Virus record (IMG/VR): IMGVR_UViG_3300024999_000030 | Location: 186,001-250,000 of that record | Length of the DNA: 64,000 nt | Direction: 5' to 3' (one strand) | In this document: positions 34,408 to 59,818 of the stretch, piece by piece | How positions within the stretch are numbered: position 1 is the first letter of the stretch | How the letters are laid out: each line of letters starts with the position of its first letter | Made by a program: the position numbers and the translations under genes | Notes under the pieces: model-generated | Told to the model about the DNA's origin: nothing | Databases searched by the model: none | Seen by the model: the letters and a program-made list of their open reading frames with translations, nothing else

Positions 34408-35525
34408 TGGATACGACAAACGGTTTAGATAGTTTTATGCAAGACCCCAAGGGAGCTATTAAAAGCTTTTGGGATAAACCAGAGGGCGCGGCTGGCAAAG
34501 TGGCTATGGTTGGTTTGCTAGTTTTGTTTGGTCTCGGTATTTATAAAGCGCTCCCTTATATTGTTCTTGGCTTACAAAGCGCCCTCACTGCCACTTTACT
34601 TGGGGTTGGCCTTTTTGGTATTCTGTATGTGATTTTAAATAAACAATTCCAAACGGCAGTTTGGTATCTTTTCCAGATTGCCATGAAGAAGTTTACGGGC
34701 TTTATTATTGAATTGGACCCCATCAATATTCTCAAGAGTTATCTTGAAAGCCTTAAGCGTTCCTTGGGCGATATGGAACGAAGCATCAGCAAGCTCAATG
34801 GACAGATCCGGTCCCTTGATCAAATCATTCACAAGAATGAAGAGGATCGTAAAGAGAGCTTATCTATTGCCGGTAAAGCCCGAGAGACCGGTAAGAAGCA
34901 GGCCTTGGTTTTAAATGCTAGGAGGGCAGGGCGGCTTCAGAAATCCAATTTTACTTTACAAGTTCTACGAGATAAGTTATCAAAGCTTTTGACTGTTTTG
35001 GAAAAAATGTATGAAGTTTCTGAATTTCTTTATCAAGACACCGCCGATGAGGTTAAAGTTCAATCTCAACAATATGAAGCTACTAAAACCGCATGGTCTG
35101 CTTTTAAGTCTGCCCTAAGTGTAATTAAGGGTGATCCAGATAAACGAGCTATGTTTGATCAGACCATGGAATATATGGCTGATGATTTTGCCATGAAGAT
35201 TGGTGAGATTGAAGAATTCATGAAAATGAGTTCTGGGGTAATCGAAGGCGTAGATTTGCAAAATATGGTTTATGAAGAAGACGCTCTTAATGAACTCGAC
35301 ATGTGGTCTCAAAAAGCTGATAGCCTTCTTCTTTCTCCTGGTGAAAAACAGGAACTTATGCGACCCAGCTCTATGTATGATCCCGAAGTTCTAAAAGCTA
35401 GAAAAAATAATAGCACTGATTCTGTGTTGGAAGCTGCGTCAAAACAACCCGCTACCCCCGCTGTCTCTAGACATGAGAAAAAATCTTTGGAAGACTTTGA
35501 CTCGTTTTTTGATTCATCTAAATAA
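34407..35525 (+). CDS. Membrane-anchored long coiled-coil protein (PspA/IM30-like)
   Basis: Two N-terminal hydrophobic helices followed by long amphipathic helices. The PspA resemblance is inference. Confidence 0.5.
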   Translation: MDTTNGLDSFMQDPKGAIKSFWDKPEGAAGKVAMVGLLVLFGLGIYKALPYIVLGLQSALTATLLGVGLFGILYVILNKQFQTAVWYLFQIAMKKFTGFIIELDPINILKSYLESLKRSLGDMERSISKLNGQIRSLDQIIHKNEEDRKESLSIAGKARETGKKQALVLNARRAGRLQKSNFTLQVLRDKLSKLLTVLEKMYEVSEFLYQDTADEVKVQSQQYEATKTAWSAFKSALSVIKGDPDKRAMFDQTMEYMADDFAMKIGEIEEFMKMSSGVIEGVDLQNMVYEEDALNELDMWSQKADSLLLSPGEKQELMRPSSMYDPEVLKARKNNSTDSVLEAASKQPATPAVSRHEKKSLEDFDSFFDSSK

Positions 35526-35546
35526 CTAACGCAAGGAGGAAAAGAA

Positions 35547-37079
35547 ATGGAACGTAAAGTAAAAACTGGTCCAAAAATTATTGGTCTCGCTTTACTTGTT
35601 ATTGGCCTTATCTTCGGTGGAAAGTGGGTGTTGAACAACACTAATATTATTCCGAAGGGATCTAGTGGTACAAGCAAATCTTTCTTTAAACACGCTAAGG
35701 AACCTCTTAAGGTTTGTGTGGTTACCTGGGGAGGTTATGCTGGTGGTCAGTATTATAATCGTGGTTTCAAACCGAATGACGACTCTCAGTATCTGAAGAA
35801 GTATGATCTTCCTGTAGAGTTTGTTGTTATCGACGATTATAACGCATCCAGAGAGGCGTGGAAGGCCGATGCAGTCCAGGTGCTGTGGACTACTGCTGAC
35901 TCGTTTCCGACCGAAGCTGGGGCACTACAGCGCGCCGGATACAAACCTAAAATCATTTTTCAGTCTGACTGGTCCCGTGGTGGAGATGTCATTGTTAGTA
36001 CCCGAGTTATTAACTCCATTCAGGATCTCAAGGGTAAGCGAGTTAGTGTTGCTTTCGGCACCCCATCCCACACCTTCCTGCTGCGTTCGTTAGAGGCGGT
36101 AGGTATGACGGTTAAAGACCTCAAACTTATTGAGGTTCCGTCTGCTGTTGATTCTGCCACGGCCTTTAAGGCTGGACAGGTTGAGGCGGCGGTGGTGTGG
36201 TCCCCTGACGATGAAGACTGCATTAGTAAGGTTTCAGGAGCTAAGGCTCTCGCTTCCACTAAACAAGCTACCCATATCATCGCCGATGTTTTCTATGCTA
36301 AGGAAGAAATTATTGAGAAGCGTAGAGACGACATCAAGGCTTTGGTAGAAGGTTGGATGATTGGTGCGGCGGAAGTTAACTCTAGCCCCACTGCCCGCTC
36401 TCAGGCTGTTAAGATTCTGGCCGAGGGTTTGAATCAACCTGATGGTTTCATTGATCAGGCAATTAACAATGTTCGCTTAAACACCTACGGAGACAATGTG
36501 AACTTCTTTAATCTTCGTGGAAGTTTTACTGGTGTAACTGGCGAACAGCTTTATCTTGAGACCGGTAGATTGTATCAGGAAAATACCAACCTGGTTCCAG
36601 ATGGTATGCCTTCCTGGAGAGTTATTAGCGATGCCAGTATTCTTCGTGATATCAATCTCACTGGCGTTAATGATGGTGCTGAATCTGACTTTAAGTTCTC
36701 TCAGCCCACCAAGTCTCTTGAAACCGCTCCAGCTCTTAGCACTAAGCGTTTATCTGTGAGCTTCGCCACGGGCTCAGCCTCTCTCGATGCCAACGCTAAG
36801 ACGATTATTGACCTTGGGTTTGTTCCCACGGCTAAGTCGTTTGCTAGTGCCCGCATCAGAATCGAAGGTAACACAGATAGTACGGGTAGTGCCTCGACCA
36901 ACGAGCGTCTTTCCTATCTTCGCGCTAAAGCTGTTGCTGGATATCTTTCCGAGCAGTATGGATTTGACAGCAATCGTTTCGTCATCGTTGGTAATGGTCC
37001 CAATAAACCAATAGCTGACAATGACACCGAAGAGGGCCGTTCTGCTAATCGTCGCACCGATTTTGAGTTGGTGCGGTAA
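35547..37079 (+). CDS. ABC substrate-binding (SsuA/NMT1-THI5-like) - OmpA C-terminal fusion
   Basis: N-terminal TM anchor; DLKGKRV..AFGTPSH..L; C-terminal FATGSASL..IEGNTDSTG..NERLSYLRAKAV..NRRTDF OmpA motifs. Confidence 0.88.
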   Translation: MERKVKTGPKIIGLALLVIGLIFGGKWVLNNTNIIPKGSSGTSKSFFKHAKEPLKVCVVTWGGYAGGQYYNRGFKPNDDSQYLKKYDLPVEFVVIDDYNASREAWKADAVQVLWTTADSFPTEAGALQRAGYKPKIIFQSDWSRGGDVIVSTRVINSIQDLKGKRVSVAFGTPSHTFLLRSLEAVGMTVKDLKLIEVPSAVDSATAFKAGQVEAAVVWSPDDEDCISKVSGAKALASTKQATHIIADVFYAKEEIIEKRRDDIKALVEGWMIGAAEVNSSPTARSQAVKILAEGLNQPDGFIDQAINNVRLNTYGDNVNFFNLRGSFTGVTGEQLYLETGRLYQENTNLVPDGMPSWRVISDASILRDINLTGVNDGAESDFKFSQPTKSLETAPALSTKRLSVSFATGSASLDANAKTIIDLGFVPTAKSFASARIRIEGNTDSTGSASTNERLSYLRAKAVAGYLSEQYGFDSNRFVIVGNGPNKPIADNDTEEGRSANRRTDFELVR

Positions 37080-37129
37080 ACTAAATTTTATAATGGGGGC
37101 CCATATTGGGCCCCCTCTATGGAGGTCAT

Positions 37130-37759
37130 ATGAAAAAGTTTCTGATTACTATGGCGTTGTCGATTTTCTGTGTTACAAACTGGGCCACTTTTACTGGGCT
37201 CACACTTATTCCTACTAGTGATTACATTGGTAAGGATGTGTGGTCTATTGGTGGGCAGGCCTGCTATACTAAGTTCCACACCGATCAGTTTCTTATTACT
37301 GAGTTTGGTTTGGGAGATAGATGTGAAGTGGGGTTTGACTTCTACGCCAATCCACAACAAGTTGAGCATCGTGAATATTTTAACTTTAAATACATGGTGC
37401 TTAAAAGCGACAGCCATAAGTTTTTTGTCAGCGTTGGGTTTTACAACATGATGGTTACTGGAAATTCCGTTCCGTTTCTTGTGGCCACTAAGGACTTGGG
37501 TTTGATTAGAGTCCACGGTGGGGTTCAATATGAAGGACTAACGGACACTAAAAGTAATTGTATGATTGGCATTGATCGTATATTTACTAATGGTTGACAA
37601 GTGTCTGCCGATTATACACATGGTCAACAGAACTTTTCTTCAATCGGCGTTGGTCGTATTGGTAAGCGTTGGCAAACTTTTGCTGGTGCCATGTATCCTA
37701 ATGCTGGCGGGCGGCCCCTTGTTATGTTGAGGATAATTTTTACTGGCAAGGGGAAGTAA
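37130..37759 (+). pseudogene. Signal-peptide protein, beta-strand rich (possible outer-membrane barrel), with in-frame TGA at 37595
   Basis: The frame continues past TGA as NG*QVSADYTHGQQNFSSIGV...LRIIFTGKGK to TAA 37759. Confidence 0.55.
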
Positions 37760-37983
37760 ATGTTTGAAATTTTAATCAGGGGTTTTAAAACTAAAGCACA
37801 AGCAGAGGCATTTTATAGCTGGTATGAAGGACAAGGAGAACAAGACGCTTGTATATGGTTTGAGTGTAGAAAAGAAGAAGGCGACATAGATGTTGATTCT
37901 ATGTTGACTGATGTCAATGTTGGGAATAAGTGGGTAGGAGATTGTTTGACCTTTGAAGTAACCCCTAATTAAACGGAGATCGC

Positions 37984-38781
37984 ATGGATAGTTTGTTTAC
38001 TTTGCGTGGAACACTGTCCAATAGAAATAAACTCATCGTAGAAATTCTTGGAGCAATGTTACTACTTGTTATTTGGTGGACGGTAGTTAGTACTGGACTT
38101 GTTCGTTCCAGCATTCTTCCTTCCCCAGTAAGCGTTATTACTTCCGTGCCAGAGTTGCATTATCAAGACGCTCTTATTATGAATTGTTTGTATTCCCTAA
38201 AACTTAATATTATGGGATACATCGAAGCAATTCTCATTGCTATTCCCCTTGGGTTTTTTATTGGTCTCATTCCAGTATGTAGGGGAATGACAGAGAGATA
38301 TATTACCGCCTTGAGATACCTTCCACTCACTGCCGTCATTGGCTTATTTATTCTGTGGTTTGGTATCGGCGATGCGATGAAGATTCAATTTTTAACTCTG
38401 GGAATTGTTGTGTATTTATTACCAGTAGTAGTGCAAAGAATCGATGAAGTCCAGCAAGTTTATCTGGACACCATTAAAACTTTAGGAGCTACTAACTGGC
38501 AAACAATTTTTAGGGTTTATATTCCCAGCGTTGTTTCTAGGATATCGGATGATATCCGTGTGCTTGTTGCTATCTCTTGGACTTATATTATCATTGCTGA
38601 AGTAGTGAACAAACAGGACGGTGGCATCGGGGCTCTTATTTTTACAGTAGCGAGACAAAGTAGGGTAGATAAGGTGTTTGCCCTTTTGGCTGTTATTATT
38701 GTAATTGGATTCACTCAAGATAAGTTATTCATGTGGTTAGATAAAATTGCGTTTCCATTTAAATATAAAGGAGGTCGATAA
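37984..38781 (+). CDS. ABC transporter permease (SsuC/TauC-like)
   Basis: About 6 TM helices; EAA-like loop (TIKTLGATNWQTIFRVYIP); IVAE-like IIAE motif. Confidence 0.9.
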   Translation: MDSLFTLRGTLSNRNKLIVEILGAMLLLVIWWTVVSTGLVRSSILPSPVSVITSVPELHYQDALIMNCLYSLKLNIMGYIEAILIAIPLGFFIGLIPVCRGMTERYITALRYLPLTAVIGLFILWFGIGDAMKIQFLTLGIVVYLLPVVVQRIDEVQQVYLDTIKTLGATNWQTIFRVYIPSVVSRISDDIRVLVAISWTYIIIAEVVNKQDGGIGALIFTVARQSRVDKVFALLAVIIVIGFTQDKLFMWLDKIAFPFKYKGGR

Positions 38782-39647
38782 TGGCACGTAGCGTTGGAGA
38801 AGAAATCATCGAGGCCGCCATTAATAATACCTCCGATGGTGTTACTTTTGAGAACACCAAATACCCAGACATAATTGAGTTAAAAGATATCTGCCAGACT
38901 TATGATGGCGGAAAAAATTACACTATTAAGAACTGCAATTTACTTATTGAAAACAAACCGGATCAGGGACAGTTTGTGGTACTACTCGGTATGTCTGGAT
39001 GTGGTAAATCCACATTGTTAAAATATATTGCTGGCCTACAGCAGCCCACATCTGGACAAGTTTTAATTGGTGGAAAACTTCGTTCCGATAAAGATATTGT
39101 CAGTATGGTATTCCAACAATATTCTTCTTTCCCATGGCTCTCTGTGCTTAAAAATGTGATGTTACCCCTAGAGCTTAAGGGCGTATCATCTAAAGAGTGC
39201 AGAGATAAGGCTATGGAAATGTTAAAACTTGTTGGGCTTGTGGAACACAAAGACAAATATGCAATGTATGGACCGTTATCCGGCGGTCAGTTACAGCGCG
39301 TTGCTATTGCCCGTAGTCTTGTTTCCAACCCTAACATCATTTTAATGGACGAGCCCTTTGGTGCTCTTGATGGGGTAACTCGTTATCAAATGCAAGTTCT
39401 TTTATCAAAGATTTGGGAGGCTCTTAAGTCAACCATTATTTTTGTTACTCATGACATTAGAGAGGCTGTATTTTTGGGAGATGATATTTATATTATGGCT
39501 CCTCATGGTGGTAAAATTCTTAAGCATTTCTTTGTAAATTTACCACTACATCGAGATTTAGATATCATGCAGGATCCAATCTTTATTGAGACCGTTCGCC
39601 AGATTGATATAGAAATGAGATCTGCTGCAGAAAAATATTTGAAATAG
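38781..39647 (+). CDS. ABC transporter ATP-binding subunit (SsuB/TauB-like)
   Basis: GMSGCGKST, MVFQ, LSGGQLQR, LMDEPFGALD, VTHD. Confidence 0.95.
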   Translation: MARSVGEEIIEAAINNTSDGVTFENTKYPDIIELKDICQTYDGGKNYTIKNCNLLIENKPDQGQFVVLLGMSGCGKSTLLKYIAGLQQPTSGQVLIGGKLRSDKDIVSMVFQQYSSFPWLSVLKNVMLPLELKGVSSKECRDKAMEMLKLVGLVEHKDKYAMYGPLSGGQLQRVAIARSLVSNPNIILMDEPFGALDGVTRYQMQVLLSKIWEALKSTIIFVTHDIREAVFLGDDIYIMAPHGGKILKHFFVNLPLHRDLDIMQDPIFIETVRQIDIEMRSAAEKYLK

Positions 39648-39782
39648 AGTAACAATGGAATTAAATCATGTATAAGCCTTACATACCAGAGCGTGACAAA
39701 AACATCAAGCTTTATAATGATGGGCATTCCTGTCATTTGAAACCATTACCTCTCGACATGGAGGAGAAAGAGAAGGAACGAA

Positions 39783-40601
39783 ATGTTCTTCACCGACTAT
39801 GGACAAATATTAGAAAGCTCATTTCCCTGCGGAGAGAAAAATGTTAATGATTTTAAAGTCATGGGACATTCACTTTTGGCAGCGAGTAACATCAAATGGA
39901 AGTGGGAATCTGATTCAGAACTAATCACGCTCATGTTGATAAAAAAGCTCTATCCAAATATTTTAACTCTTACAATTTTTTACCTCCCATATGGAAGAGC
40001 TGACAGGAACGAAAAAGGTGGAAGTTCGTGCTCGCTAAGATATGTCGGAGATTTTATTCAATCACTTGGATTCGAGAAAATTACAGTTCTCGATCCCCAT
40101 TCCGATTTATCGATTGCATACCTTGGCGAATCTGCGTGCTCATATTATCCAAAATCTGAACTGCTTACAGGGCTTGGCGTTAACTACACGCCAAAAAATT
40201 CAGTAGTAATGTTTCCTGATTCTGGAGCACAAAAGCGTTATGGCAAAGCCTGGTATGGATATCTGCATGTCTTAGGTTCAAAGACCAGGGATTTTCGAGA
40301 CGGTAAGCTCACTGGTTATTCTATCGCGGATGGGGTTCCAGCAGAAGGCAAGCATGTTATTATAGTTGACGACATTTGTTCGTATGGTGGTACATTTATA
40401 CTTGCCTCAAACGCTATCAGAAAATTCAATCCGTTGTCAGTGGCACTTGTTGTAACTCACTGTGAAGACAGCATTTTCAATGGTGATGTTTTAAAGGCTG
40501 GTAGCCCAATCGATCTTGTCGTCACAACAAATTCCCTAATTACTAAAGAGGGATCTTCTAAACTTAAAATCGTAGATGTTATAAAAACAGGAGGGAACTA
40601 A
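39783..40601 (+). CDS. Ribose-phosphate pyrophosphokinase-like protein (putative Adps of NARP1)
   Basis: FPCGE, YLPYGRADR, DPHS, FPDSGAQKRY, IVDDICSYGGTF; adjacent to the NAMPT-like gene. Confidence 0.85.
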   Translation: MFFTDYGQILESSFPCGEKNVNDFKVMGHSLLAASNIKWKWESDSELITLMLIKKLYPNILTLTIFYLPYGRADRNEKGGSSCSLRYVGDFIQSLGFEKITVLDPHSDLSIAYLGESACSYYPKSELLTGLGVNYTPKNSVVMFPDSGAQKRYGKAWYGYLHVLGSKTRDFRDGKLTGYSIADGVPAEGKHVIIVDDICSYGGTFILASNAIRKFNPLSVALVVTHCEDSIFNGDVLKAGSPIDLVVTTNSLITKEGSSKLKIVDVIKTGGN

Positions 40602-42071
40602 TGCCCAGAATCCCAATGCTTATGGCCGACTTCTATAAAATAGGCCATAGAGAACAGTATCCAGATGGAACACAAACCGTGTATTCAACTTGGACGCCGA
40701 GAGCAAGTAGGGTCGAACCAATAAAACATGTAGTTGCCTTTGGGTTCCAAGCCTTTATTAAGAAGTATCTCATTCAGTTTTTCAATGAGAACTTTTTTGA
40801 AAGACCGAAGGCCGATGTGGTTTCTGAATACAAGAGGGTAATTTCTTCAACTCTTGGGATAGGGAACCCGCATACCCAACATATCGAAAGGCTTCATGAT
40901 CTCGGATATCTTCCAATTAAAATTATGGCTGTGCCAGAAGGCACCAGAGTCCCACTTCGAGTTCCGATGCTCACAATAGAAAACACAGGCTCGGAGTTTT
41001 TCTGGCTCACAAATTTTCTTGAAACACTTATGTCTTGTGAAATTTGGCTGGCAAGCACGAGCGCAACAACCGCAGCCGAGTACAGAAAAATCCTGGATCA
41101 CTATGCAAAGTTGACTGGTGATCCAGAGTTTGTTAAATTCCAAGGGCATGATTTCAGTTTTAGGGGCATGGCGTGCTTAGAGGCTGCTGAAATGAGTGGA
41201 GCGGGACATCTTCTCAGTTTTGTTGGAACAGATTCAATTCCAGCCATCACATATCTAGAGGAATATTATCACGGGAATGTAGAGAAAGAATTAATTGGAT
41301 GTTCAGTGAACGCTACTGAGCATTCTGTTATGTGTGCTGGGGGGGGCTAACAACGAATTTGAAACATATAAGCGACTGATGTTCGATGTTTATCCAACAG
41401 GGATACTTTCAATTGTCTCTGACACTTGGGACTTCTGGAATGTCTTATCTAATATTATTTTTCCACTAAAGGATGGAATAATCAAGCGTGATGGAAAGAT
41501 TGTCATTAGACCAGATAGTGGTGACCCAACTAAAATAATTTGTGGGGATCATGATGCTAACAACCTCCTCGCATATAAGGGGGCCATCGAAGTTCTTTGG
41601 GACATATTTGGAGGTACCGTTAACGATAAAGGATATAAATGTTTGGACCCACACATTGGTCTGATTTATGGTGATGCCATCACCCTTGATCGATGTAGGG
41701 AAATTTGCAGCGGGCTCGAAGCAAAGGGCTTCGCATCCACAAATGTCGTCTTTGGTATTGGGTCATATACATATCAATGTGTAACACGTGATACATTTGG
41801 CTTCGCTTTAAAATCAACCCATGTTACAATTAATGGAGAAGATGTAAACATCTTTAAGAATCCACTAACTGACTCCGGGTCCATAAAGAAGTCGGCAATT
41901 GGAAGGGTGGCTGTCCTACAGAAAGACGATGGGGAACTTTATTTGTCCGATGGACATGGCCGGGAAGAAGTTCCTGGAAATCTCTTATCTCCTATTTTTG
42001 TGAATGGTGTATTAGTTAAAGAACAAACACTTGCAGAAATTCGCGAAAGACTTACTTCTGTAAAAACTTAA
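40601..42071 (+). pseudogene. nadV: Nicotinamide phosphoribosyltransferase-like protein (putative Namat), split by +1 frameshift at G8 (41339..41346)
   Basis: DFYKxxH, HDFSFRG, ATEHSVM | SIVSDTWD, IRPDSGDP, LIYGDAIT, KKSAxG. Removing one G restores CAGGANNEFETY. Confidence 0.88.
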
Positions 42072-42083
42072 ATTAGAAATATA

Positions 42084-42515
42084 ATGCCAGATAAAATTAA
42101 AGTTACATATTCATCTGGAGTTATTAAAGAAGTAACGGCGACTACCGCAGCTAAGATTTACAGAAGGCAAGCCAGACAAGCTATTGAACGGGCTATGGCA
42201 CATGATATAGAATATTATGAATTGTTTAACATTTTAAAACATCCCGTAAATGACTATAGATGTCTTATTTCCGAATGTCTTACTGGAAAAAAGGGTTCAT
42301 ATTCTTTTTCTACTTGTGAAGAATGTTTTTTTGAAAGTAAATATGGTTGTGTTCTTAAGCTTATTACTAGTGAGCTAATGACGGAAGATACAGCTAGTTC
42401 CTATATTAAAAAATTACTGGACCTGAAGGGCATCGGCACATTAGAACTTTTTATTATTAAAGTTCATGCGGGGTTGCAAGCCACTGGACTTGGAAACAAA
42501 TCCCAAAAGAGGTGA
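42084..42515 (+). CDS. Degenerate four-Cys family paralogue 20
   Basis: RCL..CL...CEECFF..YGCVL; lacks a clear FIxNP. Confidence 0.5.
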   Translation: MPDKIKVTYSSGVIKEVTATTAAKIYRRQARQAIERAMAHDIEYYELFNILKHPVNDYRCLISECLTGKKGSYSFSTCEECFFESKYGCVLKLITSELMTEDTASSYIKKLLDLKGIGTLELFIIKVHAGLQATGLGNKSQKR

Positions 42516-42551
42516 TTTGTGAGACAACTCACGAGAGCGCCTTAATGTTGA

Positions 42552-42596
42552 TGGCATTATTTTAACCCGTCGGAATAATGCCAACTTAAATGACGG
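42552..42596 (+). ncRNA. Candidate H-type pseudoknot
   Basis: TGGCATTATT/AATAATGCCA stem; loop CCGTC complementary to downstream GACGG. Confidence 0.45.
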
Positions 42597-42868
42597 CCTT
42601 AATTATCCACAATTAGAAAGGAGTTCCTCAAATGGAACAGACCATGGTTAAGTATCGAGTTGTACTTCTCAAAGTTGTTGAGGGCAGTAAAGACAAGATG
42701 ATTCATAGTTTCACTCGCCCCTGTACTCAAAGTAAAGCTGAGAAGATTTTCAATCAGCTTTTGCTGGATTGGGGATTGAAGTACGATAAGGATACGGGCT
42801 TTGATCCCCCGCCTGCCAATGATGCGGTATATCCCGCTATTGTAGCAGTTGAGTAAGTAATAACAAAA

Positions 42869-43603
42869 TTTCTTTCTTCATTCAAACTATTCCCCACATA
42901 AAGAACCATCTCCCTTCCCTCCTAATTATAGGTGAATGAAGGAGTAATGTTCTAGGAAATTGAATTTGATAGAAGAAAGAAAACTCCAATTAGGCCGATG
43001 GCGATTGTTTGAACGCTCAACTCTCGTTTGCGTGAAGACCCACTCAGATCGATTGGCCAGGCGTTTACATGGAAGAGTAGACATGGCTAGAGATATCTCT
43101 CTTGTTTATTCTTTCTTTTATGAGTGTGTTACTCTATTGGGGCGGTTTCGATACCAATCCACAGTATGCGTCCATGATAAGTTATGGAATAGAGATGGCA
43201 TACTCTAGAAGGCGGACGGTCGTGTCCGCCTTCGCCAAACACCTGTATTACTGAGAGGGTGTATGGTTCCTAAAGTTGGAACCATTTACTACATCGTCGG
43301 TTCTTTTGCAGAGAAAAAGGTCAATGGCATGACGCCGCAAAGATTGTTGTGCTTCGGCACACCTTTGAGTCTGGGCAGGCTTATTATATAAGCCCAGCCG
43401 GTTCTGCAATTCCCAACTCGCGCTTATGAATCACAAATCAACGTTGCTACGTGAGTGCAGTCAGGCAGCTGACCAGTAATACTTATTGAATTGACTACCG
43501 GTAGTGGTCATTCAATCGGGGTCATCATGGTGATGACCCCACAATCCGGCTAAAACTAATCTTCTGGTGGAGCCGGGGAAGAGCATGTGCTCAGGAAGAT
43601 TAG
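42869..43603 (+). ncRNA. Large structured non-coding region E (about 735 nt)
   Basis: GAAGGCGGAC/GTCCGCCTTC, ATGGTTCC/GGAACCAT, GTGC-UUCG-GCAC, TTGCAGA/TCTGCAA, GGGGTCATCA/TGATGACCCC, CTAATCTTC/GAAGATTAG. Confidence 0.65.
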
Positions 43604-43620
43604 GGAATAGGAGATAACTA

Positions 43621-44145
43621 ATGTCATATATGGATAGTATTTTTGAAGCAAGTAGTTATAAAAATATTGTTTCTAAAACAGCATTAGTAATTGATAAGAT
43701 TTCCGAAAAACATAATAAACTTTCTATTGTTCATACGGGATTAAGTGGTGGTTTAATTGGCCATCCCGTTGCAATGGCTCTAAAACTTAATAGCATGCAC
43801 ATTAGAAAGAATGATCAGAGTCATGGAGATCCAATAGAGGCTGGATATAGTTCACCCGATAAGCAAATTAAGTTTCCATATGCTATCGTTGATGATTTTA
43901 TGGATAGTGGTGATACCATTAAGAAAATAATTAAGAAAATGAAAAACTTTTTTCCCAAATGTTTTCCGGTTGGAATTGTATTATATGATGAAATCTCTTT
44001 TGATGTGTGGGACCATAAAGTGATTAACTCCGTAGTAAAGGGAGATTTTTCTGTCTATACCTTTTGGCATAAAGCTAAAGGATATAGAGTACACACCTTC
44101 GATGGCAAAGAATGGCATGAATCTAAAACTCTTAAAAAGTTTTGA
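43621..44145 (+). CDS. Type I phosphoribosyltransferase
   Basis: YAIVDDFMDSGDT PRPP-binding loop; TGLSG motif. Confidence 0.82.
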   Translation: MSYMDSIFEASSYKNIVSKTALVIDKISEKHNKLSIVHTGLSGGLIGHPVAMALKLNSMHIRKNDQSHGDPIEAGYSSPDKQIKFPYAIVDDFMDSGDTIKKIIKKMKNFFPKCFPVGIVLYDEISFDVWDHKVINSVVKGDFSVYTFWHKAKGYRVHTFDGKEWHESKTLKKF

Positions 44146-44152
44146 GGCATAA

Positions 44153-44665
44153 ATGTTTCCAATGTATAATATCAATGAATTTATTAATTTGATAGATAAG
44201 TTTTTATCAAACCCGACTATTAATTCCGCTCATTCTTTCTTAACTAATCCCTATATGTTTGGTGGTTTTGGAGCTGCTCCTGGAAGAGTAAGTGCCAAGG
44301 CTATATATTATGATTGTCAATTTCATCATCATGTTCTTGGGGGGCAGGAGAGAAGTCAACAGTATTGTGATCGATGTCCATTTGCTCATAAAGGCAATTT
44401 AGTAACCAAGAATCAAGCCTTCTATTCAAACTGTTCTCTTGTACATTCATTTGTATTATTTGAAGTACCTCCACATTATTCTGATGTTACATGTCTCGAC
44501 ACAAATGAACAATATGGATTATCTAAGTGTTCTCTTGTTAATTTAATTCCAAAGTTAATTATGGGGTTAATAACCATGAAAGCTATTTGTGAAATTAAAA
44601 AAGAAAAACTCCGACAAGTTAATGAAAAAAGGAGAATGTCCCGTGGTAAATCCCAAAACCCGTAG
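44153..44665 (+). CDS. Four-Cys family paralogue 21
   Basis: KFLSNP...DCQF...CDRCPF...NCSL...GLITMKAIC. Confidence 0.75.
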   Translation: MFPMYNINEFINLIDKFLSNPTINSAHSFLTNPYMFGGFGAAPGRVSAKAIYYDCQFHHHVLGGQERSQQYCDRCPFAHKGNLVTKNQAFYSNCSLVHSFVLFEVPPHYSDVTCLDTNEQYGLSKCSLVNLIPKLIMGLITMKAICEIKKEKLRQVNEKRRMSRGKSQNP

Positions 44666-46119
44666 GGAATACCTCAATACTAAAACTAAACTTTATGCCA
44701 TCTTATTGAGATTTGATGAAAGTGATCTTAGTCCCAATGAACTCAATCTCATGCAGGCGTTAATAAAAGATACGGACATTCAGGCTATTCTGGAAAGATC
44801 GGCTTTTCAGGATAAATAAACGCGAGGAGCACCCTGCGTGGAAATGGGTGTCAACTAGTTGAAAGACTAGTCAAGGAGTTTCACATGTCTAATCTCGAAC
44901 AGCGTGCAGCGAATCTTATTAGCAAAACCTGTCACACTAACCCCCTTGTACCTGGTAAATTTGCAGGACCCTGGACTGGAATGCCTCTTGATAAAGCTAT
45001 GGCTAAGCTCAATAAAATTGACGAAGAATTGAAGGCCGAGCGAGACGAAATTACTAAAGCCATTAATAATGAGGATGCAAAAGCAAGAGCGAATTATCCC
45101 AAGCGCACAGCTTCCGATTGGGCTTATATTCGGCGCCTGAAGAAGCTTGGTGTAATTGGTTAATGAATAAGGCTCAAGGAGAAACTATGAAGAAAATTTT
45201 AGTTTGTTTTCTATTTACGGTTTTGGTAATTGGTTTTATGGGTTGTAGCATTAGCCCAACCAAAAGTCGACAAGCAGTCGTATCAAAATATGGTCCTGAG
45301 GTTCAGAGTTTACCAGAGTTTAGCTATATATTTATAGCTAGGAAAACTAACGGAGAAGTTTGGTATGTATCCTGTTTGAACTCTAATGATAATAATATCT
45401 CTGAAGAGACCCTATTATTTGGTCCAATTAAAAATCAGCAATAAACATGTTTAAGTTATTTAATCTTTTAAAATTATGCTTTAAAGATTTATTTTCTAAT
45501 AGACCGATGACTGAGACCGATATGAAATCAGCCTTAGCAATGTGCGGTATTCGTTTTTACTCTTGTCCGTATTGCGGTAAGGAACTCACCGAGTATGAAC
45601 TTAAACATGGGCTTCGTGAAGACCAAGATGATACCGGACCTATGTAGGAGGTGCAATTGGACGATTACGATGAAGCTGAATCAAATAATTCAAGTATAGA
45701 AAATGGAGTGTGGTACGCATTTAAATGTCCAGTATGTCTCGTTGAACAGTCGGCGTGGTGGCTTAGGGGATATATCGAAATGAAACAACATGAGCCACTT
45801 GAAACTATACGCCTCTGTCCTAAATGTAACGCAGAATTGAAATTTACCGTAGACAGACATACCAAAGGCATTTGTACCGTTGAAAGGAACAGGAGATGAG
45901 GCTTCAACAAGTAGAATCATATCCTAAAGCTAACGATGAATACTGGACAGAAATAAGTCTAGGAAATGCGATTGCCATTTCATTTACAGTTAATGAAAAT
46001 GGGGAGTGTAACAAAGCTCTTATATCTGATATGCGGGATGGCATTCAATTTGAAATAGATTTTTTAGCTAAAACAAGTTGGTATGACAGAGCTGTTATGA
46101 AAGCGAAAGAGGTAAAATT

Positions 46120-46482
46120 ATGTCTGCACAAAATAATTTCATCTTAACAGTAAAGTCTTTAATCAGCGCTGGTAAAAAAATTGAAGCCATTAAGGAAGTG
46201 AGAGAGGTTTTACTTCTTGGTTTAAGGGATGCTAAGGATTTAATTGATGCCTGTGAGGCTGAGAAGAGTATGGAACCGCTCACTAGAGTCGCTAGAAACA
46301 TTGCCTCGCAAACTGTCAAAGGTTCTCCAAGTATTGTATTAGTTGTTTTTGACGGAGAGGATTCTAGTGTATCTTGTCGGCTCTCTATTGGCACCTTTTC
46401 CTGTAAGGATGTGACTGAAGTTCAAATCAAGCGGGCCATTGCTATGATAGGGGCTGCTCAAAATTGCGATGTCCAAGAATAA
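46120..46482 (+). CDS. Protein with ribosomal bL12 (L7/L12) C-terminal-domain-like motif
   Basis: GKKIEAIKEVREVLLLGLRDAKDLID resembles the remembered L12 motif [24 protein letters not shown]; no L12 N-terminal domain. Confidence 0.65.
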   Translation: MSAQNNFILTVKSLISAGKKIEAIKEVREVLLLGLRDAKDLIDACEAEKSMEPLTRVARNIASQTVKGSPSIVLVVFDGEDSSVSCRLSIGTFSCKDVTEVQIKRAIAMIGAAQNCDVQE

Positions 46483-58318: not shown

Positions 58319-59818
58319 TGGTTAAAAGGGGACAGGCTGTTCCTGGAGCCAGGGTAGTAGTCAAAGACATGTTAAGAAAAAGTATTTTTACATGGGAACC
58401 ACCCCAACCTAATAAATTTCCAGTTCTTAAAGGAGCTGCAGATGCCTTTGGGGGTGGGTGGGAAGTTTCCGCTGGAGATGTTCTTGAAATTTTAGATCCA
58501 GTTTCTAAAATTACATCTGGTGAATGGAGCGTTAGTAGTCGCAATGGATGTTGGTATAAAGATTCTATTCAAGTGGTTCCCGTTAGAATTATATCTCATC
58601 TTAACGAGACCCTTCCTGTTTTTCATGATGGATTTGCATATTGGCAGGACATATATAGAGGAACCGACTTAATATTTTCACCACCTAACTGTTCGGTTGA
58701 AACCAACTGTCCGATTGAAACTAATGGAAAGGATAGAAATGATTGAAAAAAACTGGTCCTTAGATAAGACCACTACGGTTAAAAAAGTTATCGCTGAAAT
58801 TTCCACAACTATCTTCAACGAAGTTAATACTTTTATTGCGGATGATAACGGGCTTAATACTAAAAAGAAAATCATTGATTTTATTACTAACGCCCTAAAG
58901 GAAGAGGACTTTGTTACCGTAGAATATGTGAGGGCTGGTTGTACCGTAGCCTATAACATTTCTAAAACCTATGGTAATAGAATTACTTTTAGTAGTGCTT
59001 TTGATTTTCCCGTATCTCAAACGCTAGAGAATGCTGGGTCCTATTCTCTGAAGTTTGATTTGGATGAACAATCTATTTGCGTTGATACTTCCAAGGCCAA
59101 TGGGGTCATTCAACTGTACGGGGCCATCAATGGTATGATTGAAAGTATGTCTTCTTTTAACTCTGGAACATCAGCCCCAGCCAAGGTTAGTGAACTCTAT
59201 AAAATTATGGAGGGCGGCGGGTTTGCTCTTGAAGGAGATAAAACCTGGGCAAAGAAATGGAAGACTGAATACGGACCCATCACCCTTCATCTCGATTATA
59301 AAAATGATTTAAGTTCTCTCACAGAACAAGATGTATCTGCTGCACAGTTAATCACCACTATTCTTGAAACATTGGGGAATAACAATGGGTAAGAAAAATG
59401 AAATCAAACCCCTAGACGAAGAGAAAACTACAGTTAATGGAGTTGAAATTATTTTTCAAAAGTTTCAAGACATTTCTAATATATATTTTTGTAGTGAATG
59501 TTCCACTTTCATTCGTCCCGATGTTGAAGCTGGCGAATTCTTTTGGTACTCCCCAATGACCGGCGGAGTATTATGCGGAAGCGGAGACTGCAAAGAAAAA
59601 CACATGGAAAAGATTATAGAAAAAGCTAAAGAGGCTGAAGAAATTGATCTTACTAAAGAAGATGATGAAGCTTCGGAGGATGATGATAAGTAAATAAATT
59701 ATATCTCACTTATCTTTTTGTAGTTAATCCATTAAAAATTCACAAATCGGTTTACATAATCGTTTCAACCAACCCTAACAAATGTAACTGTCCGGTAACA
59801 CTCAAAGGAGAAAAACCA

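What the first reader, a model, noticed from the sequence alone, without database searches (positions are those of the whole stretch)
39783..42071. NARP1-like NAD+ reconstitution pair with a G8 frameshift in the second gene
Seen: translationally coupled PRPS-like and NAMPT-like genes, no NMNAT in the window, and one extra G in a G8 run splitting the NAMPT-like gene. Known: phage NARP1 (Adps + Namat) rebuilds NAD+ from ADP-ribose and nicotinamide to counter NAD-depleting defences such as Thoeris, DSR and SIR2 systems. Inference: if real, the poly-G tract is a phase-variable on/off switch for an anti-defence pathway.
Basis: partly seen in the sequence, partly recalled or inferred. Interest (0 to 1): 0.65.

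Follow-up and report, generated by a model that had tools for sequence, protein, structure and literature searches.

The report
Broken NARP1 operon in jumbo phage
An uncultured 333-kb groundwater phage carries the known two-gene NARP1 pathway that rebuilds NAD+ to beat bacterial immunity. Its second gene is cut in two by one extra G in a run of Gs in every public assembly, so it looks like a recently switched-off gene, not a demonstrated on/off switch.

Summary
Window 39783-40601 encodes a 272-aa Adps-like protein (a PRPS relative). Its stop overlaps the start of a Namat-like gene (TAATG). That gene is split at a G8 run (41339-41346) into a 249-aa N-half and a 245-aa C-half in the +1 frame. 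Dropping one G gives a 489-aa protein that is 64% identical to the crystallised SPbetaL1 Namat, with the catalytic core and the ADPR-PP "selectivity clamp" almost intact. It branches inside the Namat clade. The whole 332.7-kb genome has no NMNAT, Nudix, Macro or RyR domain. So the pair is NARP1, which is already known in about 4% of phages.

G8 is not an assembly slip. It is present in Logan contigs of four runs (7-208x, two studies), in two JGI assemblies, and in at least 24 contigs that encode the identical truncated product. No intact allele exists among about 15 billion public proteins. No homologue has a poly-G run at this site. One variant contig carries G8 plus a further 26-nt out-of-frame deletion.

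Otherwise the gene shows no decay: 1 deviation at 161 near-invariant positions. The best reading is a recent frameshift null allele at a mutable tract. Phase variation is neither shown nor excluded, because only contigs could be examined, not raw reads.

The parts
39783..40601 (+). Adps-like gene (ADP-ribose diphosphokinase, a PRPS relative), 272 aa, intact
   Evidence: phrog_619 at E 2.7e-55. Scores 80 bits, below the 113-bit cut-off of the canonical Prs model TIGR01251. 34% identical to SPbetaL1 and FADO Adps. ICP1-numbered residues F18, R87, H121, D161, K185, D212, D213 and F221 are conserved. PP loop DDICSYGGTF resembles SPbetaL1 DDLSSFGGTF.
40585..40603 (+). Coupling junction: GGAGG Shine-Dalgarno sequence, then TAATG where the Adps stop and the Namat start share one base
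   Evidence: Sequence read directly. Same one-base overlap in SPbetaL1 and KKP_3916.
40601..41350 (+). Namat N-terminal half, 249 aa, ending ...TEHSVMCAGGG then stop
   Evidence: phrog_448 positions 15-260 of 500, E 3e-103. NAMPT_N plus the start of the NAPRTase domain. The exact product is encoded on at least 24 public contigs.
41321..41323 (+). Codon of the catalytic histidine (TEHS motif; SPbetaL1 H245), 16 nt upstream of the tract
   Evidence: Alignment to SPbetaL1 Namat. Role of the histidine taken from PMC12774641.
41339..41346 (+). G8 homopolymer. One G more than the in-frame G7 (GCT GGG GGG GCT = A-G-G-A)
   Evidence: G8 is identical in IMG/VR contig 3300025015_000017, JGI Ga0209212_1000024, JGI Ga0209000_1006033, and Logan contigs of runs X1, X2, X4 and X5.
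41348..41350 (+). Premature TAA stop in the upstream frame, directly after the tract
41346..42071 (+). Namat C-terminal half in the +1 frame (open from 41334). No Shine-Dalgarno sequence or plausible start of its own
   Evidence: phrog_448 positions 260-495 of 500, E 5e-90. 305 bits to SPbetaL1 Namat chains 9w5x/9w5w against about 95 bits to true NAMPTs.
41760..41792 (+). Namat selectivity-clamp helix motif GSYTYQCVTRD (consensus GSX-Phi-X-Phi-X-Phi-TRD). Position 7 is Cys instead of the usual Tyr/Phe
   Evidence: Motif defined in PMC12774641. Alignments. NARP2-type Nampts have GGGLLQxxxRD instead.
41457..41482 (+). 26-nt segment deleted, out of frame, in a variant contig of the same phage that also has G8
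   Evidence: JGI 3300025011 Ga0209000_1006033 (L110) equals window 40993-46236 with 0 mismatches and one 26-nt gap.
41292..41330 (+). Predicted RNA hairpin 8 nt upstream of the tract. Its significance is uncertain
   Evidence: MFE -19.2 kcal/mol, z -2.85, 2 of 200 shuffles as stable. It lies in conserved coding sequence, so it may be incidental.

Best explanation
This is a genuine NARP1 operon (Adps then Namat) in an uncultured 333-kb groundwater phage. The Namat gene carries a recent +1 G slipped-strand insertion, G7 to G8, in the codons of the conserved Ala-Gly-Gly-Ala just after the catalytic His.

Translation therefore stops at residue 249. The truncated protein lacks R306, D308, the 360-362 loop and the whole selectivity-clamp helix, so it cannot make NAD+ from ADPR-PP and nicotinamide. 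The pathway is off in the sampled, essentially clonal population.

What is shown: the identity of the genes, the lesion, and its presence in every assembly. What is inferred: loss of activity, recency, and that the allele is a neutral or tolerated null rather than a regulated state. A G8 tract can slip back, so rare revertants are expected on general grounds, but none is on record.
For: Identity:
- The read-through protein is 64% identical to SPbetaL1 Namat over 481 aa and 31-33% identical to NARP2-type Nampts.
- The C-half scores 305 bits to SPbetaL1 Namat against 95 bits to true NAMPTs in the PDB.
- It sits in the Namat clade with SPbetaL1, FADO and KKP3916. The Nampt clade splits off with 100 SH-aLRT support.
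- All NAM/NAD-contact residues are kept except Y396C.
- Adps catalytic residues are kept.
- No PF01467 or PF00293 domain in the genome.

Lesion is real:
- 0 differences and 0 gaps across 39500-42500 in contigs of four runs at 7-208x.
- The identical truncated product is on at least 24 contigs in 37 index blocks.

Lineage-specific, not a conserved device:
- 66 IMG/VR homologues have G-runs of 4 or fewer here.
- The closest intact relatives (75-81% identity) use GGC GGA, GGT GGT or GGT GGA.
- GGGGGG Gly-Gly codon pairs number 8 of 483, against 7.9 expected from 12.8% GGG usage.

No ON allele: the best intact hit among 5.8 billion cluster representatives is 81% identical.

Decay has begun in a subpopulation: G8 plus a 26-nt out-of-frame deletion.

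Precedent: natural ICP1 isolates lack these genes or carry a Y29* nonsense allele of the Namat homologue (10.1101/2024.06.17.599363).
Against: - Apart from the extra G, the gene is as conserved as intact homologues: 1 deviation at 161 columns that are at least 95% invariant, where the family median is 1. That fits a very recent break, but equally fits continued selection through reversion or recoding.
- Adps is intact.
- Long G runs are mildly over-represented in the genome: 3 runs of G8 or longer against about 0.8 expected (my estimate from the counts, Poisson P about 0.05).
- A second tract differs (G7 vs G8) between assemblies, so these tracts do slip on population time scales.
- Minority read variants could not be examined. 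Only contigs were available.
Confidence: 0.62

Rival explanations
1. Contingency locus. The poly-G tract is a selected, reversible ON/OFF switch for the anti-defence pathway. The sampled population is mostly OFF, and a G7 ON minority is selected on hosts with NAD+-depleting defences.
For: - G8 lies inside the ORF and one step from in-frame.
- The gene is otherwise undecayed.
- Another poly-G tract in the same phage is G7 in one assembly and G8 in 18 contigs.
- A G9 tract sits in frame in a Kelch/Ig tail-like gene.
- Long G runs are weakly enriched.
[quoted passage not shown] 2021 Cell Rep 35:109214, as cited in PMC10877375).
Against: - No G7 allele in any of at least 24 contigs or in the protein collections.
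- The tract is absent from every homologue, including the closest.
- GGG-GGG pairs occur at chance frequency.
- A variant carries a second disabling 26-nt deletion.
- No known cost of NARP1 that would make an OFF state useful.
Confidence: 0.18
2. Recoding. Full-length Namat is made from the G8 template, either by transcriptional slippage (one G fewer in the mRNA) or by +1/-2 ribosomal frameshifting on GGG GGG GGC UAA.
For: - tRNA-Gly can re-pair perfectly in the +1 frame within the G run.
- The 0-frame stop UAA-C follows immediately, and the G-rich run resembles a Shine-Dalgarno sequence, superficially like the prfB site (sequence; prfB comparison is my own knowledge).
- A stable hairpin ends 8 nt upstream (z -2.85). 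Stem-loop-stimulated transcriptional slippage is known for IS elements (my own knowledge).
- The gene is otherwise undecayed.
Against: - The site is not conserved in any homologue. Programmed sites normally are.
- The codon before the stop is GGC, and its +1 codon GCU re-pairs poorly.
- rG:dC hybrids slip less readily than A/U runs.
- The hairpin lies in conserved coding sequence and is only moderately unusual.
- No RNA data exist.
- The 26-nt deletion variant argues that the downstream half is dispensable.
Confidence: 0.07
3. Sequencing or assembly artefact. The true sequence is G7 and the gene is intact.
For: Homopolymers are classic error sites. All assemblies come from two related groundwater studies, and any of the runs may be the source of the record.
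Against: - The same G8 appears in separate run-level assemblies at 7x, 11x, 13x and 208x, and in assemblies by JGI, ENA, NCBI depositors and Logan.
- This is the only homopolymer-linked gene break among 133 runs of 7 nt or more, so there is no platform-wide homopolymer error signature.
Confidence: 0.04
4. Functional split enzyme. The two halves are translated separately and assemble into an active Namat.
For: Both halves are open reading frames. Shorter NAMPT-fragment families exist in PHROGs (phrog_16547 and phrog_15800).
Against: - The C-half has no Shine-Dalgarno sequence. Its only starts are a GTG upstream of the tract or an ATG 30 nt downstream, which would remove a conserved helix.
- The break lies in the middle of the catalytic domain, just after the catalytic His.
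- No homologue is split here by a frameshift.
Confidence: 0.02

Closest known systems
NARP1 of Bacillus phage SPbetaL1 (Adps + Namat; Osterman et al., bioRxiv 10.1101/2024.02.11.579819; Namat structures 9w5w/9w5x, PMC12774641)
   Same: - Same gene order, with a 272-aa Adps whose stop overlaps the Namat start by one base.
- Namat is 64% identical.
- The catalytic core, the SCL stacking Arg (R40; here R37) and the SCH motif are conserved.
- No Nmnat in the genome.
   Different: - Namat is frameshifted at a lineage-specific G8 tract.
- SCH position 7 is Cys instead of Tyr.
- Adps is only 34% identical.
- The host phage is a 333-kb uncultured groundwater phage, probably of a diderm host, not a Bacillus phage.
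- An ABC importer lies directly upstream.
Natural null alleles of NARP1 in Vibrio phage ICP1 (NrsA/NrsB; ICP1_2001_A ORF229 Y29*; 10.1101/2024.06.17.599363)
   Same: A wild phage lineage carries the operon with the Namat homologue inactivated by a single small mutation. Other isolates lack the genes. This shows that NARP1 is dispensable when the host lacks the matching defence.
   Different: There the lesion is a nonsense substitution, and its loss of function was shown by sensitivity to the Nezha defence. Here it is a homopolymer +1 insertion, and no phenotype is available.
Hypermutable polyG tracts of Campylobacter phages (Sorensen et al. 2021, Cell Rep 35:109214, cited in PMC10877375)
   Same: A poly-G tract inside a phage ORF, where a change of one G toggles the reading frame.
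   Different: In those phages the tracts are in receptor-binding protein genes, and mixed tract lengths were observed. Here the tract is in an anti-defence enzyme gene, only one length is observed, and the tract is not shared by any relative.
NARP2 (Nampt + bifunctional Nmnat/Nudix, KVP40-like phages)
   Same: It uses a homologous NAPRTase-family enzyme and counters NAD+ depletion.
   Different: - NARP2 Nampts carry GGGLLQxxxRD instead of the Namat clamp motif.
- They form a separate clade (100 SH-aLRT).
- They lack an adjacent Adps and need an Nmnat. This genome has neither Nmnat nor Nudix.

Membership tests
NARP1 (Adps + Namat) | [quoted passage not shown] | tested here: met
   GSYTYQCVTRD at 41760-41792. 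Same length and register as SPbetaL1 GSFTYQYNTRD, with 10 of 11 positions fitting. Position 7 is Cys, as in three intact IMG/VR homologues (L072, L074, L075). NARP2 Nampts have GGGLLQ..RD.
NARP1 (Adps + Namat) | SCL loop with a stacking Arg, Lys or Tyr (SPbetaL1 R40) | tested here: met
   TPRASRVEPI aligns with SPbetaL1 TPRTSRVEDI. R37 aligns with R40.
NARP1 (Adps + Namat) | Conserved Nampt-like catalytic core (D13, Y15, F189, R192, D215, H245, R306, D308, G360-D361) | tested here: met
   All are identical in the read-through protein. They are divided between the two ORFs by the frameshift.
NARP1 (Adps + Namat) | Namat branches in the Adps-associated clade, separate from Nampt | tested here: met
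   Quick IQ-TREE of 58 sequences. The Nampt group without Adps splits off at 100 SH-aLRT. Ours groups with SPbetaL1, FADO and KKP3916 at 91. PDB scores are 305 vs 95 bits. The careful tree search did not finish.
NARP1 (Adps + Namat) | Adps: a PRPS-like protein outside canonical Prs, with the catalytic Lys185, the acceptor residues and the remodelled PP loop (PMC13586617) | tested here: met
   F18, R87, H121, D161, K185, D212, D213 and F221 are conserved, and the PP loop resembles SPbetaL1/FADO. It scores below every NCBIfam Prs cut-off (80 vs 113 bits) and only 55 bits to PDB PRPS. F92 and D216 (ICP1 numbering) are not conserved, but they are not conserved in SPbetaL1 either. No Adps/Prs tree was built.
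NARP1 (Adps + Namat) | The two genes are adjacent in one operon, and the genome has no Nmnat | tested here: met
   One-base stop/start overlap. PF01467 and PF00293 are absent from the 332.7-kb genome while the controls were positive. 46 of 48 IMG/VR homologues also have an Adps-like gene next door.
NARP1 (Adps + Namat) | Both ORFs intact | tested here: not met
   Namat is interrupted by the +1 G at 41339-41346, with a stop at 41348.
NARP1 (Adps + Namat) | Enzymology: ADPR + ATP gives ADPR-PP; ADPR-PP + nicotinamide gives NAD+; rescue from Thoeris, DSR or SIR2 defences | not testable with these tools
   Needs expression and LC-MS or plaque assays.
Phase-variable contingency locus | Homopolymer of 7-8 nt or more inside the ORF, with ON and OFF one repeat unit apart | tested here: met
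   G8 gives OFF. G7 would restore the family consensus TEHSVMCAGGA.
Phase-variable contingency locus | Tract-length polymorphism at the locus, with both states present | tested here: not met
   Only G8 is found in four run-level contig sets, in three JGI/IMG assemblies, and in at least 24 contigs with the identical truncated product. No intact allele is on record. This is consensus-level evidence only; minority reads were not visible.
Phase-variable contingency locus | Tract conserved in relatives or enriched beyond composition | tested here: not met
   No homologue has a G-run longer than 4 here. GGGGGG pairs number 8 against 7.9 expected. Genome-wide runs of G8 or longer number 3 against about 0.8 expected, which is only marginal.
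Phase-variable contingency locus | Evidence that poly-G tracts of this genome actually slip | tested here: met
   The tract at genome 265966-265973 is G8 in 18 contigs and G7 in Ga0209212_1000024, together with a compensating 1-nt insertion 16 nt away.
Programmed frameshift or transcriptional slippage site | Shift site and stimulators conserved among homologues | tested here: not met
   The site is unique to this phage. There is an upstream hairpin (z -2.85) and an adjacent stop, but their relevance is untested.

The most novel reading that the evidence does not exclude
The G tract is a true contingency locus. A jumbo phage toggles an NAD+-reconstitution anti-defence pathway ON and OFF by poly-G slippage, possibly alongside a G9 tract in a Kelch/Ig tail-like gene and a polymorphic G7/G8 tract elsewhere in the genome. 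This would be the first phase-variable counter-defence gene described in a virus.
Probability: 0.15. Interest if true: 0.7.

Novelty: new member of a known kind. Interest (0 to 1): 0.3.

Why it matters
NARP1 is a recently described and widespread phage counter-defence. This adds a member from an uncultured groundwater jumbo phage and documents a natural, population-wide null allele. That fits the idea that such pathways are gained and lost with host defence pressure.

If raw reads showed mixed tract lengths, it would extend poly-G phase variation in phages from receptor-binding genes to anti-defence metabolism. As it stands, the evidence favours an ordinary recent inactivation.

Tried and rejected
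- Megablast of the locus against 50,697 phage records: no match. There is no close cultured relative.
- Rfam on the window and on five interrupted homologues: no intron or other RNA family at the site.
- Promoter and terminator scan of 35000-44000: counts are no higher than in shuffles, so it was uninformative.
- Pattern scan of GTDB genomes for the tract flanks: no match, so no host clue.
- Translate with code GGGG=G: the word was read twice and shifted by two bases, so it was useless. The unique in-frame word CATT=H was used instead for the read-through search. It alters 5 residues next to the break. The exact G7 protein was built only inside Python, for alignments and the tree.
- Two other "homopolymer frame changes" flagged by my scan (A7 at window 58746-58752, A7 at genome 253426) are ordinary overlapping or adjacent gene junctions.
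- The second IMG/VR contig (111,968 bp) is 100% identical to the genome, so it is not independent evidence.
- Searches for extended-NARP1 accessories (Macro phosphatase, RyR domain): none in the genome.
- The careful maximum-likelihood search did not finish in the time allowed. The quick tree was used.
- No structure prediction or complex prediction was run. At 64% identity to a crystal structure they would add nothing.
Full report
**What is there.** The window is bases 186001-250000 of a 332,730-bp IMG/VR virus record. CheckV rates it 100% complete and its GC content is 38%. The record comes from groundwater metagenomes.

At 39783-40601 lies a 272-aa ORF that matches phage "ribose-phosphate pyrophosphokinase" (phrog_619, E 2.7e-55). 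It is followed by two ORFs, 40601-41350 (249 aa) and 41334-42071 (245 aa). These match contiguous halves of phrog_448, "nicotinamide phosphoribosyl transferase": profile positions 15-260 and 260-495 of 500.

The first gene's TAA stop shares its last base with the ATG of the second gene, and GGAGG lies upstream. The break is a run of eight G at 41339-41346. The upstream frame reads GCT GGG GGG GGC TAA. The downstream frame is +1.

**Is it NARP1?** For alignments only, I read the gene through in Python by dropping one G. This gives a 489-aa protein whose junction, TEHSVMCAGGANNEF, matches the family consensus TEHSVMCAGG(A/E/K/S) with exact spacing.

- It is 64% identical to the crystallised SPbetaL1 Namat over 481 residues, and 60% identical to FADO Namat. 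It is only 31-33% identical to Nampts of phages that lack Adps.
- Against the PDB, the C-half scores 305 bits to SPbetaL1 Namat (9w5x/9w5w) and about 95 bits to true NAMPTs.
- The Namat structure paper (PMC12774641) defines the features that set Namat apart from Nampt. These are a clamp helix motif GSX-Phi-X-Phi-X-Phi-TRD and a clamp loop with a stacking Arg, Lys or Tyr.
- The window encodes GSYTYQCVTRD (41760-41792) and TPRASRVEPI, with R37 equivalent to R40.
- All nicotinamide and NAD contact residues are identical to SPbetaL1 except F392Y and Y396C. Cys at clamp position 7 also occurs in three intact homologues.
- In a quick maximum-likelihood tree of 58 sequences, the Nampt group without Adps separates with 100 SH-aLRT. 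This protein groups with SPbetaL1, FADO and KKP_3916.

The upstream protein scores below every canonical Prs model of NCBIfam (80 vs 113 bits). It keeps the residues shown to matter in ICP1 Adps: F18, R87, H121, D161, K185, D212, D213 and F221. Its PP loop resembles that of SPbetaL1 (PMC13586617).

The whole genome has no CTP_transf_like (Nmnat), Nudix, Macro or RyR domain, and only this one NAPRTase-family gene. The pair is therefore NARP1, not NARP2 or classical salvage. This is as far as sequence can show; the enzymology is untested. NARP1 is known in about 4.3% of sequenced phages (10.1101/2024.02.11.579819), so the pathway itself is not new.

**Is the extra G real?**

- Logan contigs of four runs, from four samples in two studies at depths of about 7, 11, 13 and 208x, cover 39500-42500 with no difference and no gap. 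Any of them may be the source of the record, so they show reproducibility across read sets, not independent populations.
- G8 is also present in IMG/VR contig 3300025015_000017, JGI Ga0209212_1000024 and JGI Ga0209000_1006033.
- The exact 249-aa truncated product, which requires G8, is recorded on at least 24 contigs in 37 index blocks from NCBI, JGI, ENA and Logan.
- Of 133 homopolymer runs of 7 nt or more in the genome, this is the only one that splits a gene. There is thus no platform-type homopolymer error pattern.

I take G8 to be the true consensus. Only contigs were available, so minority tract lengths could not be seen.

**Switch, recoding or dead gene?** Four results argue against an evolved device.

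1. The tract is lineage-specific. None of 66 IMG/VR homologues has more than four G here. The closest intact relatives found among 5.8 billion proteins (75-81% identity) encode the same Gly-Gly with GGC GGA, GGT GGT or GGT GGA.
2. GGG is the rarest Gly codon (12.8%), but GGG-GGG pairs occur 8 times in 483 Gly-Gly pairs. That is exactly the chance expectation.
3. No intact allele of this phage's gene exists in the 90% clusters of either half, or among the search hits.
4. A 5.2-kb variant contig from a sister sample is identical to the window except for a further 26-nt, out-of-frame deletion in the C-half (41457-41482). It still has G8. This is a second lesion, as expected for a gene no longer under selection.

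Natural null alleles of this pathway are documented in ICP1 isolates.

Three results keep the switch idea alive.

1. Apart from the extra G, the gene shows no decay. It deviates at 1 of 161 columns that are at least 95% invariant among 111 homologues, which equals the family median.
2. Runs of G8 or longer are mildly over-represented: 3 observed against about 0.8 expected from the run-length decay, P about 0.05 by my own calculation.
3. The other G8 tract (genome 265966-265973) is G7 in one assembly, accompanied by a compensating 1-nt insertion 16 nt away. Poly-G tracts of this phage therefore do slip on population time scales.

For recoding, the run allows perfect +1 re-pairing of tRNA-Gly. 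A UAA-C stop follows directly, and a hairpin (z -2.85) ends 8 nt upstream. However, the site is not conserved, the codon before the stop re-pairs poorly in +1, and no RNA data exist.

**Conclusion.** The most likely reading (about 0.6) is a recent slipped-strand G7-to-G8 insertion that has switched NARP1 off in an essentially clonal phage population. A 112-kb contig from another assembly is 100% identical. The allele is tolerated because the current host presumably lacks an NAD+-depleting defence. The tract is mutable by nature, so revertants probably arise, but a selected phase-variable switch is not shown. Raw-read tract-length counts and G7/G8 expression tests would decide.

**Method note.** The read-through used for the large word search was made by reference, with the code word CATT=H. 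This changes five residues beside the break. The exact G7 reading was used only inside scripts. This is a phage metabolic enzyme, not a toxin or effector. Read laying was given 3,001 letters.

Noticed in passing
window 35547-39647 (+): A complete phage-encoded ABC importer lies directly upstream of the NARP1 pair. It consists of a 510-aa substrate-binding protein (NMT1/SsuA-like) fused to a C-terminal OmpA-like peptidoglycan-binding domain (35547-37079), a permease (37984-38781), and an ATPase of the TauB/NitT type (38781-39647, coupled by overlap). None of about 90 other NARP1 loci examined has it nearby. By analogy with NARP3 (PnuC + NadR) it might import a precursor, but the substrate is unknown. 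The OmpA-like domain suggests a diderm host.
   Followed up: partly
genome 92090-92098 (outside the window; locus L094): The longest G run of the genome (G9) lies in frame (TGG GGG GGG GCA = W-G-G-A) in a 628-aa protein with Kelch repeats, an Ig-like domain and weak similarity to a tail protein. This is the kind of gene in which Campylobacter phages carry phase-variable polyG tracts. No length variant is on record: 17 contigs encode the same protein.
   Followed up: partly
genome 265966-265973 (outside the window; loci L095, L112): The second G8 tract is G7 in JGI contig Ga0209212_1000024. That contig also has an extra C 16 nt downstream. The two indels compensate each other in a small-ORF region (58-aa vs 69-aa product on the + strand; a 45-aa ORF on the - strand). 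18 other contigs have G8.
   Followed up: partly
L026:3154-3971; L077:3697-3953; Bas60 (L088): Other Namat genes are interrupted or expanded at exactly this point, just after the TEHSVMC..GG motif. L026 has an insert of about 800 nt full of stops, possibly an intron or mobile element, though Rfam recognises none. L077 has an in-frame insertion of about 85 aa. Bas60 has a shorter insertion. The site appears to be a tolerated loop or insertion hot spot.
   Followed up: partly
L037:3600-3610 (IMGVR_UViG_3300045988_061744): Another metagenomic phage has a frameshifted Namat. It carries a 1-nt deletion (CCC to CC) at about residue 115, relative to sister contigs that are 94-96% identical. Broken NARP1 genes therefore recur in assemblies.
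   Followed up: partly
window 43621-44145 (+): A 174-aa ORF with weak phosphoribosyltransferase-domain similarity (Pribosyltran E 2e-5, PRTase-CE) lies 1.5 kb downstream of Namat. It has a 30%-identical paralogue at genome 178199-178471. Its function is unknown.
   Followed up: no
genome 252400-254600 (locus L097): A tandem array of paralogous genes whose products end in a similar ...L(K/R)x(I/L)L(D/E)NPP... motif. Function is unknown.
   Followed up: no
whole record: The same phage genome appears in public assemblies as contigs of 332,725, 332,730, 332,731 and 332,809 bp. This is consistent with a complete, circularly assembled or terminally redundant genome of about 332.7 kb.
   Followed up: no
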